DNA of 42,571 nucleotides, from positions 1-42,571 of the forward strand of contig DF237647.1 in NCBI GenBank assembly GCA_000708835.1, read 5' to 3'. Made by a program: the position numbers and the translations under genes. This DNA comes from Klebsormidium nitens. Its lineage: Eukaryota; Plantae; Klebsormidiophyceae. Positions within the stretch are counted from its first letter, which is position 1. Each line of letters opens with the position of its first letter. Positions 37,961 through 42,571 of this stretch are shown here, piece by piece. Under the pieces are notes generated by a model that saw only the letters and a list, made by a program, of their open reading frames with translations, was not told the DNA's origin and made no database searches.

Positions 37961-38898
37961 CTAGATCAGGATGTGAGATCGATGCATCCATTCACTATGA
38001 TAGTGACTAGATCAAATCTGTAGGTAGGTACCTCTTATTGCTTCCACCAGACTTCAGAGGTTTTTGAAAGACGTGTATAAAGACGAATTACAATGTACAG
38101 CTAAGTTTCGGATGAGTTGCTTTGCAATGGGATGTCTGACTGAATTACACAAATGGTCGAGTTCCTTGGCGAGTCGAAAGGGGGTTGCTCACCAATTTGT
38201 CGTTTAGGTAAGACTGCGGTCGAGACTATCATTCAGTCAACTCGATATGTCACATGAAGTCTGCTTGGGATGTCCTAAAATATTGCTTCAGATATACATT
38301 TAATATTGAACACTCATCACAAAGTCTGGGAAGGAGGGTACCTATATTGGAGACATTAACAGCAATCAACAACCTTCACGATCAATCTTCCAGCACACTG
38401 CACCAACAACTCTTGAGGCAAGTTCCGCAAGCCTGGCCGTGAAATTACAAAACTTACAGCGTTAGCCTTATAATTGGAATATCAAAGAGCATCCGGTCCA
38501 AGTTGCACTCCCAATCTCCGACATTCAAAGCCATGCATTACTACATCTATTGTACAAGCTAGGACATTGTTCTATGCAATCTGCACCCCCTAGCCACAAC
38601 AATCTAATGAGTAGTGCTTGAACACATTCCTTATAAAATATCCAGAACTTCTGTAGACTCGCTTGCTTCTCAAAAAGAACTGGCCAACCATTCCTGTTTG
38701 ATGGATTGGCAACAGCCTGCCTACTGTATAGCGGTGACTTCATATCAAACCCACTGTAATTCTCCCTAGACCCAAAACACAGCCTATAGACAGCCCTACA
38801 CGAAACCTCCCGTGTTTGAATTCCAGATTGTCAAACTGCAAAATGTACGCAATCGTGACATACGCGCGAATTACTGGTCATAAGCCAGGACCCAACAA

Positions 38899-41237
38899 CT
38901 ACTCGTGAGGCCGAGCAGACCACAAGGAGCTCAGCGCGCGAAGACGGGAGAAGTAGTCGCCCATGGCAAGTAGTCCTTGGGCAGTTTGCCTTGTGTTGAG
39001 CACCTTAGCCATCTGCTGAAGCATTTGCTGCCTGAGACTGTCAGCCTGCACAAACCACGTAGACCAGGTCAGTGCATACTTGAGGATTACTTCTACCTAC
39101 TTTACAGATTCGAACAATGACCTGTGAACTTCAAACTTGATCACAAGATTGCACATTCTCCGACTGAGGCGCGTTCAACACTGTCACAAAGTGCAAATAG
39201 GATGGGCGAATTCCACAGATGCAGATCTTTTAGAATTCTCCAAACAATTGAGACATTCTCCGCATGAGTTGTCTGTATCAAGTTGTGGCCTCACCTGCCG
39301 GACAAACGTTTCAAGGGCCCCGAGCTTGCCCATCGCGATAGCCATTTGGCCCATGTAGTTGGCCATGTTTGGGACAGTGGAGATGCTGCCAGTGCTGAGG
39401 GTGTCGGCCAGGCTTTGTTGCAAGGCTTCCATGCCCTGGGACAGGGCGTCCTCTGCTTGCTGGCTCTGCTGCTGGAGGTTGCACACGCTCAGGAGTTGGG
39501 ACTCAGTCAGGGGCTCAATCTGGGGGATGAGAATCTGCAAAGAAAAGGGAGAAGGGTAATGCCACAGTTGATGAAGCTTGGTGAAACAACTGCAGGGGAG
39601 CTGTGCGCTGTGTTCAAACTGGGAAGGCATGGGGGCCCTGCTGAAACCACAGGCCTTTCAGAATTTGGCAACCATTTGGGCAGGGGGGAATGTCTGGTGG
39701 GAAGCAAAACCATCACTTCGAATTGGCAACCTGCATGAATGTTAGACGACTTTTAAACTGCTGTAAGGCTGGTAGGATCTGACCAAAGTGCAAGACCGAC
39801 TGTCCTATCAGTACTGAACAGGTGAGAGGCGTCGTTTCGGGGCAAAAGCTCCTGAGGGGCTTAGACTAAGTGCACACAACATCACTTGTCTTCTGACAGA
39901 CGAGTCCGTGCTGAGGGGCATCAAGCCTACTGATGGACAGAGTGAGCGTACCTTGAGCATCTCAGAGGGCCGAAAACCCCCCATCCAAAGGAAGCAGCGC
40001 TCAGCTGGAGTTTTCCAGGTGCCAGACATGAGATGGAAGACATCGGCCTTGGCAGCTTCGCTCTTCAGCCTGAAGATGGTGTCATAGTGCGCCAGACTCT
40101 TGTCCACGAGTTTTTTCAACTCGGCATCTGGGAGATGGTTCTGCAAGTGCAACCAAGTATGGGTTAGAGGAGTGCAACTAGTAAGGATCAGAGGCAGTGA
40201 AGAGATTAGTTCACCAGGAACTAATTCAAAGGCAAATTATATAATTGCAAAGCAGTACCACTCACTGGCTTACATTCAGAGCAGTTCAAGAAGGAAAGGT
40301 GCACTGCAAGATTGAGACAGGACCCAATATAGAATACATGCAGGTTCAACCTGCCCCGACAAAGCACCTAAGAAACAACTCTTCACTGATTCCACACCTG
40401 GTTAGTCAGGAGACAATCCCCTCTACACGGTCCTGTCAAGGAAACAATGGTCAAAGCCCTTGGACAATGAGCGCGGCAAATTACCTGCAGGGCAGTCCGG
40501 GTGTCTGCCAGAGTCCTCTGCTGCTCTTCAACCCATCTGACGTACTCCATGTCAAACGCCGCTACAGCAGGGTTTACTTGGGCCCCATTGACACCTGCTG
40601 CTGCTGTATGTGGCTGGACCCCCTGTCGACGAGCCTGCTGCAGCTCCTCTTCCAACTGCTGCAGCCTGATTCTGCTTGCCTCCAATTGTTGCACGTACGC
40701 CTTCTTGCGCAGCCGAGACTTCCGGGCAGCCTCTCTGTTCTGTGCCAACCGCCGCTCCCGCCCAAAGAAGTCCGAAACTGTCTGAGGCATCTAGAATGAC
40801 AAGGGTCCCAGTCTCAGTTCCCCTTCCCAAACAAGAAGCAAGCTATGCTCAGGCAAGACTTGCTGATCCCCAGGACAGGAGTATTCAAGGCTCTCTTGAC
40901 AAACGAGCATTCATTGTGCAATAAGTTGCAAACCCTTCAATGGCAGTCTGTTTGATGGCAGTCTGTTTGACAGCAACACCCCCACAGAATGCATCATGTC
41001 CTTTGTCTTCAATAAGGTGCTCACCTTATCGCTCTGAGAATCATCTTGCTCATTGTCACTGAGCGTCTCATCCATTGACTGGAGCCTCATATCCGAATCC
41101 ATGACCTTCGACTCCCCAAGGAATGCCCTACTAGCCTCCTGCTGCTGCTGCTGACTTAACAAGCTAATATTACCAAAGATGCTCGAGGAGAACGGGCTGC
41201 TAGCTAACTGCGGCGGCTGTCGCTGAAAGAAGCTCAT
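38899..41237 (-). CDS. TGA: TGA-class (group D) bZIP transcription factor with DOG1 domain, 364 aa
   Basis: Exons 41237-41025, 40790-40485, 40140-39952, 39534-39295, 39045-38899 (1095 nt, all phase 0). Motifs: RRLAQNREAARKSRLRKKAYVQQLE, KADVFHLMSGTWKTPAERCFLWMGGFRPSE, QQAEDALSQGMEALQQSL, RLRALSSLW. Confidence 0.95.
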
Positions 41238-41300
41238 ACTCTCAACCTTGAGTGCTCTTATTGCTTCAATGCTTCGAACAGCTGTCCCTCTGCGGTGCAG

Positions 41301-41948
41301 CTAACCCCAAGCAAGGGAGCATGCGTAGTTGACGACCAACTTCCCCTCCAGGGCAAAGTTGTCAAACAGGTCTGCCACGAGCTCGTCGGGATTGGGCGAG
41401 AATGCACTGTTGATATACACAAACAGAGTGTCCCTGTGAATCTGCTTCCGAAGGAACTCTATAACTTTAGCAAACCTCTCTGCAGCCCCAATCTGCAAGA
41501 CAGGATACAAGAAGCATCAAACATTGTTCACAGATGGGCCCAGAGTATATGAGCTGCCTCGCAATGCCACAATGCCCTCGACTGGAGCTGTCTCAGACCA
41601 CATGATAATAGAACCACTGTAGCCTATGCAGGCATCTTCTGATAAGGGCAACCGACAATGATTGAGAATCTTACCTTAAACTTGCTGACCTTCAAAATAG
41701 GGGCATCCCCAGTTGCTCTAAAGAGGACCACAACTGCAGAATGCAGAAAAGCACATCAACAAACAAACTCCCTGCATCTGAACAAGAGCGCTGATGACAG
41801 ATTTCTCTTGGGCATACACCATTGAAGCCCCAAAAGCTCCAAACTGAGCACGACAAGCCCTCTCCTTCCAAACTAGCCCACCCTGCTCCACTGCCAACGA
41901 ACGTTCAATGCTCTCACCCTTCTTGCTTTGGGCCGCCTCCACCTGCAT
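41301..41948 (-). CDS. ATG12: Autophagy ubiquitin-like protein ATG12, 93 aa
   Basis: Exons 41948-41918, 41733-41675, 41492-41301 give [93 protein letters not shown], ending in the conjugation Gly. The first exon is the least certain. Confidence 0.93.
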
Positions 41949-42571
41949 GGCCAAAGTCCACGAGCGTCCAACTTCCTTGCCCGTCCAGTCAGCGCAACAG
42001 CCCGGGCCCCAGCTCAGCTGTTTTGAAAGGCTAGGAACCAGATTCAGAGGAGGCGGACGCTCTCGCTCGCATGAAACTTGAAAGCTGTCCACCTGGTAGC
42101 TGCGTGAGATCTTGAGATGATGACCGAATCAATTGCGTGCTTGTGTCAGGGGAGTTGCTTCTGACTTCAGTCACGGCCGGGCGCCCCCGTACAGCCAGCG
42201 TCGGTGCTTGTACACGTCCTCCATCTTCGACGTGCGAACCGTCACATACGTACCCTGAGGGGTTAAGGAACCCACCCACGCCTACGTCAGCTTTGACTCC
42301 GCCGACCGCCAGTACTACCTGCCGGGACTTCAAGTTCCAGTGCGCCGCTTCCCTCGATCTGCGTCCTGTGCATGGAGAAGGCACCCGATCGCCGACTTGT
42401 GAAACTAGATGCGGTTATGCCCTAACTAACATCTGAAGCACAAACCGTGTTTACCTGATGGTCACTTCGTATTAATGAACGCGTGCACACCCAGGTGCAT
42501 AGCGCAATGGTACCTACCTACCTCCACTGGAGGTGCCGGGCTTGCCGGGTGCCGTCCGTCGGCCTACCTCA

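What the first reader, a model, noticed from the sequence alone, without database searches (positions are those of the whole stretch)
38899..41948. ATG12 and the TGA factor share one reading frame, split only by a single TAG
Seen in sequence: the ATG12 stop (41303-41301) and the TGA ATG (41237) are on the same strand and exactly 63 nt apart. The spacer is 21 sense codons in the same frame (LHRRGTAVRSIEAIRALKVES), leaving almost no room for an ATG12 3' UTR or a TGA promoter. The stop context is TAG-C, and C at +4 is a known leaky context. Established: ATG12 conjugates through its terminal Gly, ubiquitin-like fusions can be processed after that Gly, and bicistronic mRNAs with a short upstream ORF are reported in chlorophyte algae. 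Inference: a bicistronic ATG12-TGA mRNA translated by leaky scanning or re-initiation, or readthrough giving a ~480-aa ATG12::TGA fusion. Either would couple autophagy to a TGA stress regulator. Caveats: an in-frame, stop-free 63-nt spacer can arise by chance, and AATAAG in the spacer could be a polyadenylation signal.
Basis: partly seen in the sequence, partly recalled or inferred. Interest (0 to 1): 0.85.

Follow-up and report, generated by a model that had tools for sequence, protein, structure and literature searches.

The report
ATG12–TGA two-gene transcript in Klebsormidium

Summary
The coordinates are exact. ATG12 (93 aa) ends in Gly-TAG at 41303-41301, and a bZIP+DOG1 (TGA) gene (364 aa) starts at 41237 after 63 stop-free, in-frame bases.

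The shared frame is not meaningful. Its chance probability is about 0.12. In five related genomes the spacer is 63, 63, 76, 52 and 52 nt, and it is either out of frame or closed by in-frame stops. The ATG12 stop alternates between TAG and TAA. A readthrough ATG12::TGA fusion is rejected.

What is conserved is the tight co-linear linkage. The spacer stays at 52-76 nt although neutral sites are near saturation.

Spliced RNA contigs from four K. nitens studies run unbroken across the spacer, and one 2,168-nt contig spans both genes with all six introns removed. Two environmental samples of a deeply diverged relative give the same two-ORF spliced contig.

ORF sizes and spacing match the bicistronic loci described in chlorophyte algae. 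A conserved TGACGT element lies in the shared promoter.

Best reading, at about 0.7: a conserved bicistronic ATG12-TGA mRNA, with TGA translated by leaky scanning or reinitiation. Long reads are still needed, because assemblers can merge overlapping transcripts.

The parts
42284..42291 (-). Conserved GCTGACGT element (TGA-factor/bZIP core TGACGT). It lies 343 nt upstream of the ATG12 AUG and about 180 nt upstream of the 5'-most RNA contig end. Candidate promoter element of the unit.
   Evidence: The same 8-mer is present upstream of ATG12 in L008 (-345), L007 and L009 (-251). In shuffles, a shared 8-mer containing TGACG arose with P about 0.001, and two or more shared 8-mers with P about 0.005. 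Function is inferred.
41949..42106 (-). Minimum 5' UTR of the unit (at least 158 nt). It contains one 13-codon uORF starting at 42072.
   Evidence: X11 contig record 7 starts at 42106, and depth is zero at 42132-42437 in all four runs. The true TSS is not mapped.
41918..41948 (-). ATG12 exon 1 (start context GGCC-AUG-C).
   Evidence: Joint 41733/41918 in four runs. The start context is identical in four taxa.
41675..41733 (-). ATG12 exon 2.
   Evidence: Joints on both sides in four runs.
41301..41492 (-). ATG12 exon 3, ending ...SLAWG plus TAG (41303-41301).
   Evidence: Pfam APG12, E = 2.1e-21. 100% match to annotated K. nitens ATG12 P0002.
41238..41300 (-). 63-nt inter-ORF spacer. Non-coding, with no AUG. 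Its open frame 0 is a chance feature.
   Evidence: In relatives the spacer is 63, 63, 76, 52 and 52 nt, has diverged in sequence, and has frame 0 closed or shifted. RNA contigs cover it continuously.
41025..41237 (-). TGA gene exon 1: lineage-specific N-terminal 71 aa, with A at -3 of the start.
   Evidence: Nucleotide conservation resumes exactly at this ATG in all relatives. No Pfam family. Only four database relatives, all beginning at residue 1.
40485..40790 (-). TGA gene exon 2 (basic region and leucine zipper).
   Evidence: Pfam bZIP_1, E = 3.6e-08. Joints.
39952..40140 (-). TGA gene exon 3 (DOG1 domain).
   Evidence: Pfam DOG1, E = 6.6e-30. Joints.
39295..39534 (-). TGA gene exon 4.
   Evidence: Joints.
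38899..39045 (-). TGA gene exon 5 with the TAG stop.
   Evidence: Joint 39044/39294.
38329..38898 (-). 3' UTR of the unit. Contig ends lie at about 38500 (X4, X9) and 38329 (X11).
   Evidence: table 8. Poly(A) sites are not mapped.

Best explanation
ATG12 and the TGA-type bZIP gene of Klebsormidium nitens form one transcription unit. A single promoter upstream of ATG12 produces one spliced mRNA of about 2.1-2.2 kb.

That mRNA carries two separate ORFs. ORF 1 is ATG12 (282 nt). A 63-nt non-coding spacer follows. ORF 2 is the TGA factor (1,095 nt).

The two proteins are made separately. ATG12 terminates at its own stop, which leaves the free C-terminal Gly it needs for conjugation. The TGA factor starts at its own AUG at 41237. 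Ribosomes reach that AUG either by scanning past the ATG12 AUG (leaky scanning, as shown for chlorophyte bicistrons) or by reinitiating after ATG12 or after the tiny out-of-frame ORFs.

The shared reading frame in K. nitens has no role.

Shown here: gene models, splicing, continuous RNA contigs, and conservation of the linkage, the short spacer and both start contexts.

Inferred: that single molecules span both ORFs, how ORF 2 is translated, and regulation through the conserved TGACGT element.
For: 1. RNA in K. nitens. In four runs from four studies, a spliced contig covers 41025-41492 (ATG12 exon 3, spacer, TGA exon 1) without a break and joins to ATG12 exons 1-2. X11 record 7 (2,168 nt) runs from 42106 to 38329 with all six introns removed. 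Only the six canonical joints are reported. No loose ends lie at the spacer. Depth is zero inside ATG12 intron 2, so no TGA start site lies there.

2. RNA in a distant relative. Contigs L013/L014 (1,930 nt) and L015 (1,795 nt) come from two JGI samples. Against genomic L007 they are spliced at all six introns. They carry complete 93-aa ATG12 and 365-aa TGA ORFs 52 nt apart. These are the only contigs on record that encode that TGA protein.

3. Conservation. Six genomes keep ATG12 directly upstream of TGA, with spacers of 63, 63, 63, 76, 52 and 52 nt. Spacer sequence and introns do not align between the deep lineages. ATG12 4-fold sites differ by 0.41-0.68.

4. Architecture. ORF 1 is 282 nt, ORF 2 is 1,095 nt and the inter-ORF distance is 63 nt. 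Published medians for chlorophyte bicistrons are ORF 1 291-357 nt, ORF 2 1,113-1,185 nt and inter-ORF 40-183 nt (PMC11291117).

5. Start contexts. GGCC-AUG-C (ATG12) and A at -3 with A at +4 (TGA) are identical in four taxa. Every upstream out-of-frame AUG opens only a 4-18 codon ORF that ends before the TGA AUG, or 4 nt past it in L008.

6. No embedded promoter signal. Synonymous sites of ATG12 exon 3 show no extra constraint.

7. Fewer AUGs. The Klebsormidium-clade ATG12 proteins modelled here (K. nitens, L001, L007, L008) have no Met after M1, and all six genomes replace the usual SMAWG C-terminus with SLAWG. Their CDSs have 1-3 internal ATGs, against 6 in each of two stand-alone ATG12 transcripts.
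Against: All RNA evidence is assembled short-read contigs, and two overlapping same-strand transcripts would assemble into the same contig. The tool itself warns of this.

No TSS, poly(A), long-read, Ribo-seq or proteomic data were available.

AUG depletion is not significant once the ATG12 protein sequence is fixed: 2 observed against 1.6 expected under synonymous resampling.

The 5' UTR is not short (at least 158 nt, with a uORF), unlike chlorophyte bicistrons.

The ATG12 start has a purine at -3, so it is not obviously weak.

The ATG12 stop lies upstream of four exon junctions. From general knowledge of plant nonsense-mediated decay, that could make such an mRNA a decay target.

Contigs covering TGA exons are 12-35% deeper than the ATG12-containing contig in three runs. 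This could reflect some TGA-only transcripts, or only 5' coverage fall-off.
Confidence: 0.7

Rival explanations
1. There are two independent but overlapping transcripts. ATG12 mRNA ends at a poly(A) site inside the TGA gene. TGA mRNA starts from its own promoter inside ATG12 exon 3 or the spacer. Short-read assemblers merge the two into one contig, so no bicistronic translation is needed.
For: Contigs cannot show molecule ends or prove a single transcript (warning). TGA-exon contigs are somewhat deeper than the ATG12-containing contig (422 vs 348, 520 vs 461, 716 vs 530), as some TGA-only transcripts would produce. The 5' UTR and the ORF 1 start context are not typical of chlorophyte bicistrons.
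Against: A promoter and a terminator would both have to sit inside coding sequence or in a 52-76-nt spacer that is not conserved in sequence. There is no excess synonymous constraint in ATG12 exon 3. There is no RNA in ATG12 intron 2. No contig ends or loose ends lie at the spacer in any of four runs. The only two contigs encoding the relative's TGA protein both include full ATG12. Keeping the spacer this short at near-saturated neutral divergence is hard to explain if the genes were independent.
Confidence: 0.22
2. Programmed readthrough of the ATG12 TAG produces an ATG12-spacer-TGA fusion protein of about 479 aa.
For: In K. nitens alone the two ORFs share a frame, the 21 spacer codons are open, and the stop is followed by C.
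Against: The probability of this by chance is about 0.12. All five relatives close or shift the frame. L012 has two in-frame TGA stops, L001 has two in-frame TAG stops, and L008 (76 nt), L007 and L009 (52 nt) are out of frame. The stop is TAA-G in L001, L007 and L009. The spacer diverges faster than the coding flanks: about 81% against 93.6% overall in the closest relative, and unalignable in the others. The exhaustive protein search found no protein with ATG12 in front of the TGA N-terminus. The codons after the stop (CUG CAC) do not fit the plant-virus UAG-CAR-YYA readthrough motif (own knowledge). A fusion would block the C-terminal Gly that ATG12 needs for conjugation (established knowledge).
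Confidence: 0.02
3. A bicistronic primary transcript is made but is then cut or trans-spliced into two monocistronic mRNAs, as in nematode or kinetoplastid operons.
For: Co-transcription and a short spacer would also be expected in this model.
Against: No loose ends (foreign leader sequence) were reported at the TGA 5' side in any of four runs. The joined two-ORF form is the main, high-depth contig. Spliced-leader trans-splicing is not known in streptophytes (own knowledge).
Confidence: 0.03

Closest known systems
Nuclear bicistronic/polycistronic loci of chlorophyte green algae (Gallaher et al. 2021, PMC7896298; Duenas et al. 2024, PMC11291117)
   Same: Two conserved, non-overlapping ORFs lie on the same strand. 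ORF 1 is small (282 nt here; published medians 291-357). ORF 2 is about 1.1 kb (1,095 nt here). The inter-ORF distance is tens of nucleotides (63 here; medians 40-183). The frame relation between the ORFs is random. The pair is conserved across species.
   Different: The lineage is a streptophyte alga (Klebsormidiophyceae), not a chlorophyte. The 5' UTR is not short (at least 158 nt). The ORF 1 start is not demonstrably weak, and AUG depletion is not significant. There is no long-read or translation evidence yet. Both products have known functions, whereas most chlorophyte bicistron products do not.
CDC26-TTM3 bicistronic transcript of land plants, also found in Chlamydomonas (cited in PMC11291117)
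   Same: It is a streptophyte precedent for a small, functional upstream protein ORF and a larger downstream ORF on one nuclear mRNA, conserved over long evolutionary time.
   Different: The gene pair is different. The ATG12-TGA linkage was found here only in the Klebsormidium clade. Two more distant TGA-type genes (L010, L011) have no ATG12 on their contigs.
Arabidopsis TGA9-autophagy regulon (Wang et al. 2020, as reviewed in PMC10575704)
   Same: A TGA-class bZIP factor binds TGACG motifs in ATG gene promoters, including ATG5 (the conjugation partner of ATG12), and promotes autophagy. Here a TGA factor is physically linked to ATG12, and a conserved TGACGT lies in the unit's promoter.
   Different: In Arabidopsis the link is regulatory, between unlinked genes. 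Here the two genes share a locus and probably an mRNA. No binding or expression test was done here, and orthology to TGA9 specifically was not tested.
Programmed stop-codon readthrough extensions (e.g. the tobamovirus UAG-CAR-YYA type)
   Same: In K. nitens, a UAG stop followed by C and an open in-frame extension.
   Different: Frame, openness, stop identity and downstream context are not conserved in any of five relatives, and the motif is absent. This is not a member.

Membership tests
Green-algal-type nuclear bicistronic locus | Both ORFs lie on one mature mRNA molecule (full-length read evidence). | tested here: inconclusive
   Spliced short-read contigs span both ORFs in four K. nitens studies and in two environmental samples of a relative. 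Contigs cannot prove single molecules, and no long reads were available.
Green-algal-type nuclear bicistronic locus | Short inter-ORF distance (tens to about 200 nt), far below normal spacing of co-linear genes. | tested here: met
   63 nt here and 52-76 nt in five relatives. Published medians are 40-183 nt. The next gene lies about 2.5 kb away.
Green-algal-type nuclear bicistronic locus | Small ORF 1 followed by a larger ORF 2, both protein-coding and conserved. | tested here: met
   ORF 1 is 282 nt (APG12, E = 2e-21). ORF 2 is 1,095 nt (bZIP_1 plus DOG1). 22 of 24 differences in ATG12 exon 3 are at third codon positions. The TGA protein is 92% identical to the relative's at saturated neutral divergence.
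Green-algal-type nuclear bicistronic locus | Weak Kozak-like context at the ORF 1 start. | tested here: inconclusive
   GGCC-AUG-C is strictly conserved in four taxa. It has G at -3 and lacks G at +4. No K. nitens genome-wide consensus could be computed here.
Green-algal-type nuclear bicistronic locus | Depletion of AUG codons before ORF 2. | tested here: inconclusive
   There are 2 internal AUGs against 1.6 expected under synonymous resampling, and the spacer has 0 (P = 0.32). Linked ATG12 CDSs have 1-3 internal ATGs and no internal Met, whereas two stand-alone ATG12s have 6 each. The sample is small.
Green-algal-type nuclear bicistronic locus | Short 5' UTR (medians 54-83 nt). | tested here: not met
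   The contig 5' ends give at least 158 nt in K. nitens and at least 125 nt in L013. Both contain mini-uORFs.
Green-algal-type nuclear bicistronic locus | Both proteins are translated from the one mRNA. | not testable with these tools
   This needs Ribo-seq, proteomics, or in vitro or in vivo reporters.
Programmed stop-codon readthrough fusion | The downstream ORF is in frame and open, and this is conserved among relatives. | tested here: not met
   The frame is open only in K. nitens. Relatives have in-frame stops (L012, L001) or spacers of 76 or 52 nt (L008, L007, L009).
Programmed stop-codon readthrough fusion | Conserved leaky stop and downstream context. | tested here: not met
   The stop is TAG-C in K. 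nitens and L008 but TAA-G in L001, L007 and L009. The downstream codons are not conserved.
ATG12 (ubiquitin-like autophagy protein, Pfam APG12) | APG12 fold signature and a C-terminal Gly directly followed by the stop. | tested here: met
   Pfam PF04110, E = 2.1e-21 on exon 3 and 1e-30 on the relative's full ORF. The protein ends ...AWG followed by a stop in all six genomes.
TGA-class bZIP factor (bZIP plus DOG1 domain) | A basic-leucine-zipper region followed by a DOG1 domain. | tested here: met
   bZIP_1 E = 3.6e-08 and DOG1 E = 6.6e-30. The nearest named relatives are plant TGA factors. DNA-binding specificity was not tested.

The most novel reading that the evidence does not exclude
The ATG12-TGA pair is a conserved, operon-like autophagy module of Klebsormidiophyceae. 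One TGACGT-bearing promoter, possibly bound by the TGA factor it encodes, drives a single mRNA. The strictly conserved GGCC-AUG-C context of ATG12 sets a fixed translational ratio between an autophagy conjugation protein and a transcription factor that in land plants activates ATG genes. This would be the first functionally coherent nuclear bicistron described in a streptophyte alga. Together with the ATG12-CCD transcript seen in a probable zygnematophyte, it would suggest that ATG12 is recurrently recruited as an upstream cistron.
Probability: 0.3. Interest if true: 0.72.

Novelty: new member of a known kind. Interest (0 to 1): 0.55.

Why it matters
Nuclear bicistronic mRNAs are documented by the hundred in chlorophyte algae and in a few land-plant cases. 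No paper in the searched library reports one in a streptophyte alga.

Most published examples pair proteins of unknown function. This pair is different, because both products are known. ATG12 belongs to the autophagy conjugation machinery. In Arabidopsis, a TGA-class factor (TGA9) directly activates ATG genes, including the ATG12 partner ATG5.

If long reads confirm it, the locus gives a tractable case for two questions. Does co-translation from one mRNA serve functional coupling? Does the leaky-scanning mechanism shown in chlorophytes also operate on the lineage leading to land plants?

There is also a practical lesson for annotation: an in-frame, stop-free gap between neighbouring genes is weak evidence on its own.

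Tried and rejected
1. Readthrough fusion: rejected by comparison with five relatives and by the absence of any fused protein in an exhaustive search with TGA exon 1.

2. AATAAG in the spacer as the ATG12 poly(A) signal: not conserved (AATAGG in L012; no AATAA in the spacers of L001, L007 and L008), and RNA contigs run through it.

3. AUG depletion by codon choice: not significant.

4. A known structured RNA or IRES-like family in the locus: Rfam finds nothing at E up to 0.1 in 38000-42571. The spacer sequence is not conserved, so no structure analysis was pursued.

5. An embedded TGA promoter detectable as synonymous constraint in ATG12 exon 3: none seen.

6. Alternative splicing that removes the ATG12 ORF: only the six canonical joints were reported.

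7. Literature on nuclear polycistrons in Klebsormidium or other streptophyte algae: nothing relevant. The supplementary tables of Gallaher et al. are not held, so I could not check whether ATG12 is a listed chlorophyte bicistron.

8. Earlier scan notes on bicistrons in this genome: none.

9. Deeper conservation: two more distant TGA-type genes (L010, L011) have no ATG12 on their contigs. ATG12 transcripts L005 and L006 have no downstream TGA.

10. Full-length K. nitens TGA protein as a query: not used, because a spliced protein has no reference and I did not type long sequences. Exon references and the intron-less L013 ORF were used instead.

Full report
**1. The observation**

The window is the whole 42,571-bp scaffold DF237647.1 of Klebsormidium nitens (GCA_000708835.1). 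All features below are on the minus strand.

- I rebuilt ATG12 as three exons: 41948-41918, 41733-41675 and 41492-41301. The product is 93 aa and ends ...SLAWG. The stop is TAG at 41303-41301, followed by C.
- The downstream gene has five exons: 41237-41025, 40790-40485, 40140-39952, 39534-39295 and 39045-38899. The product is 364 aa.
- Pfam confirms APG12 (2.1e-21), bZIP_1 (3.6e-08) and DOG1 (6.6e-30). The 71-aa first exon of the TGA gene has no family.
- The 63-nt spacer 41300-41238 is open in frame 0 and closed in the other two frames.
- The NCBI annotation has exactly these two genes with the same 63-nt gap.

**2. Is the shared frame meaningful?**

From local base composition, the probability that a 63-nt gap is both in frame and stop-free is about 0.12.

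I recovered the same locus from five other genomes:

| Locus | Source | Relation to K. nitens | Spacer | Frame 0 | ATG12 stop |
|---|---|---|---|---|---|
| L012 | ENA assembly | 93.6% nucleotide identity | 63 nt | two in-frame TGA stops | not read |
| L001 | Logan genomic contig | exons about 82-87% identical | 63 nt | two in-frame TAG stops | TAA-G |
| L008 | Logan, 28-kb contig | exon 1 protein identical, DNA differs | 76 nt | out of frame | TAG-C |
| L007 | JGI, 95.9-kb contig | saturated at neutral sites | 52 nt | out of frame | TAA-G |
| L009 | JGI, 9.4-kb contig | about 90% identical to L007 | 52 nt | out of frame | TAA-G |

Only K. nitens has an open shared frame. The spacer is about 81% identical in the closest relative, against 93.6% overall, and it cannot be aligned between the deeper lineages. 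The coding flanks differ almost only at third codon positions: 22 of 24 differences in ATG12 exon 3.

An exhaustive HMMER search with TGA exon 1 found four relatives. All begin at residue 1, and none has ATG12 fused in front.

The readthrough-fusion reading is rejected. The in-frame TAG is a coincidence. AATAAG is also not conserved: it reads AATAGG in L012.

**3. What is conserved**

ATG12 4-fold sites differ by 0.41-0.47 between K. nitens, L001 and L008 (Jukes-Cantor 0.6-0.75). They differ by about 0.68-0.75 to L007, which is saturated. Introns and spacers do not align.

Despite this, four things hold in every genome:

- ATG12 lies directly upstream of the TGA gene on the same strand, with only 52-76 nt between stop and start.
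- Nucleotide conservation resumes exactly at the TGA ATG, so 41237 is the real start.
- The ATG12 start context GGCC-AUG-C is identical in the four taxa modelled (K. nitens, L001, L007, L008).
- The TGA start has A at -3 and A at +4 in those taxa.

The TGA protein is 92% identical between K. nitens and the L007 lineage.

The linkage is not universal. Two more distant TGA-type genes on metagenome contigs (L010, L011) have no ATG12 on the contig. Two other ATG12 transcripts (L005, L006) have no TGA downstream.

**4. Transcript evidence**

The sequencing-run search returned 20 runs from 7 studies that hold the stretch. I laid contigs of four runs from four studies on 38001-42571.

- All six introns appear as GT..AG joints in all four runs, so these are RNA data.
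- In every run, one contig covers 41025-41492 (ATG12 exon 3, spacer and TGA exon 1) without a break, and it joins upstream to ATG12 exons 2 and 1.
- In X11, one 2,168-nt contig runs from 42106 to 38329 with all six introns removed. It reaches from the ATG12 5' UTR to the TGA 3' UTR.
- No other joints were reported, and there are no loose ends at the spacer.
- Depth is zero in ATG12 intron 2 and in 42132-42437.
- In the other three runs the contig breaks only at TGA intron 1, where a low-depth intron-retaining variant branches off.

A pattern search of JGI metagenome contigs, anchored on the conserved TGA start, returned L013 (1,930 nt). Against genomic L007 it is spliced at all six introns. 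It carries a complete 93-aa ATG12 ORF, the 52-nt spacer, a complete 365-aa TGA ORF and about 370 nt of 3' UTR. An exact-protein look-up showed that the only two contigs encoding that TGA protein come from two different JGI samples, and both have this two-ORF structure.

Two deeply separated lineages therefore give the same picture.

The caveat is real. Short-read assemblers merge overlapping same-strand transcripts, and contigs show neither ends nor molecule continuity.

**5. Mechanism**

The locus matches the published architecture of chlorophyte bicistrons (PMC11291117):

| Feature | This locus | Published medians |
|---|---|---|
| ORF 1 | 282 nt | 291-357 nt |
| ORF 2 | 1,095 nt | 1,113-1,185 nt |
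| Inter-ORF distance | 63 nt | 40-183 nt |

In those algae, about one third of pairs are in frame, as chance predicts (PMC7896298). Mutational work there supports leaky scanning.

Here the mature RNA has the ATG12 AUG plus two out-of-frame AUGs before the TGA AUG. In all taxa such AUGs open only 4-18 codon ORFs. These end before the TGA start, or 4 nt past it in L008.

AUG depletion is not significant once the protein sequence is fixed: 2 observed against 1.6 expected.

At the protein level there is a hint. The Klebsormidium-clade ATG12 proteins modelled here have no internal Met, and all six genomes have SLAWG where 51 of 62 streptophyte ATG12 hits have xMAWG. Linked ATG12 CDSs have 1-3 internal ATGs, against 6 in each of two stand-alone ones. 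The sample is small.

Two features are unlike the chlorophyte set. The 5' UTR is at least 158 nt and contains a mini-uORF. The ORF 1 context has a purine at -3.

I therefore commit to a bicistronic mRNA (about 0.7). Leaky scanning is the more likely route to ORF 2, and reinitiation is the alternative.

The main rival is overlapping independent transcripts (about 0.2). It would need a promoter and a poly(A) site hidden in coding sequence or in an unconserved 52-76-nt spacer. I found no excess synonymous constraint in ATG12 exon 3 that would point to such elements.

**6. Promoter element and functional link**

Upstream of ATG12, the otherwise unalignable sequences of K. nitens, L008, L007 and L009 share GCTGACGT. 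In K. nitens it lies at 42291-42284, which is 343 nt before the AUG and about 180 nt before the 5'-most contig end. A second ACGT-type core follows it, and GGTACGTA lies nearby.

In shuffles, a shared 8-mer containing TGACG arose with P about 0.001.

TGACG is the binding core of TGA factors. Arabidopsis TGA9 binds such motifs in ATG gene promoters, including ATG5, and promotes autophagy (PMC10575704).

Autoregulation of the unit by its own ORF 2 product is an inference only.

**7. Comparison and novelty**

This works like, and is best filed with, the nuclear bicistronic loci of green algae and the CDC26-TTM3 bicistron of land plants. Membership is not complete:

- Not yet shown: single-molecule evidence and translation evidence.
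- Not met: the short 5' UTR criterion.
- Inconclusive: the weak-Kozak and AUG-depletion criteria.

It is not a readthrough gene.

No paper in the searched library describes nuclear bicistrons in Klebsormidium or other streptophyte algae. I rate it a new member of a known kind, of moderate interest. The interest comes mainly from two points: both products have known and plausibly connected functions, and the linkage is conserved at deep divergence.

**8. Limits**

One call each of the look-up of sequencing runs and read laying was allowed, and both are used. No long-read, TSS, poly(A), Ribo-seq or proteomic data were available. The organism names of the relatives are unknown, because they come from Logan, ENA and JGI environmental or coded samples. 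The depth of the linkage outside the Klebsormidium clade was not resolved.

Noticed in passing
L003:471-2115 and L004:419-2093 (Logan ERR12684107 / ERR12684108): These are intron-less RNA contigs from another organism. They carry ATG12 (105 aa, ending NQAWG, stop TGA), a 97-nt AUG-free spacer, and then an ORF of more than 410 aa for a carotenoid cleavage dioxygenase (RPE65, E = 1.8e-63). The CCD's best matches are Mesotaenium (49%) and Closterium (39-42%), so the source is probably a zygnematophyte. This is a second streptophyte-alga case of ATG12 as an upstream ORF, with a different partner.
   Followed up: partly
window 42284-42291 (minus strand); L008, L007 and L009 upstream of ATG12: A conserved GCTGACGT element (TGA-factor core) with nearby ACGT-core motifs lies in otherwise unalignable promoter DNA of four genomes. 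It may mean the ATG12-TGA unit is regulated by its own TGA factor.
   Followed up: partly
window 42457-42506: A 50-nt exon-like block is covered by RNA contigs whose sequence continues on both sides into letters that lie nowhere in 38001-42571. It is probably an exon of a neighbouring gene whose other exons lie off this stretch or off the scaffold end (table 7).
   Followed up: no
window 38001-39044 and beyond: In run X1, the contig holding the last TGA exons continues 839 nt past position 38001. In X4 and X9 the contigs end near 38500, and in X11 at 38329. This suggests alternative 3' ends or read-through towards the downstream Tmemb_14 gene.
   Followed up: no
window 39045-41024 (TGA introns) versus 41493-41674 (ATG12 intron 2): Low-depth intron-retaining contigs (about 2% of exon depth) exist for TGA introns, but none at all for ATG12 intron 2 in four runs. 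This fits 5'-to-3' co-transcriptional splicing of one unit, but it does not decide the question.
   Followed up: no
L010:8001-10957 (JGI 3300060284, 38.8-kb contig): The same metagenome as L007 holds a second TGA-type gene (bZIP plus DOG1, 60-70% identical in DOG1 exons) with no ATG12 on the contig. It could be a paralogue in the same alga or belong to another organism.
   Followed up: partly
P0146 (ENA contig of 4,036 nt): A predicted 620-aa protein carries ubiquitin, ribosomal L40e and RPE65 Pfam hits together. It may be another small ubiquitin-family ORF lying just upstream of a carotenoid oxygenase and merged by gene calling.
   Followed up: no
last 10-12 nt of the spacer in all six genomes (window 41238-41249): A purine-rich tract lies directly before the TGA AUG in every lineage (GAGAGU, GGGAGUAUC or GGAAGGAGC), although the rest of the spacer is not conserved. 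Its meaning is unknown.
   Followed up: no
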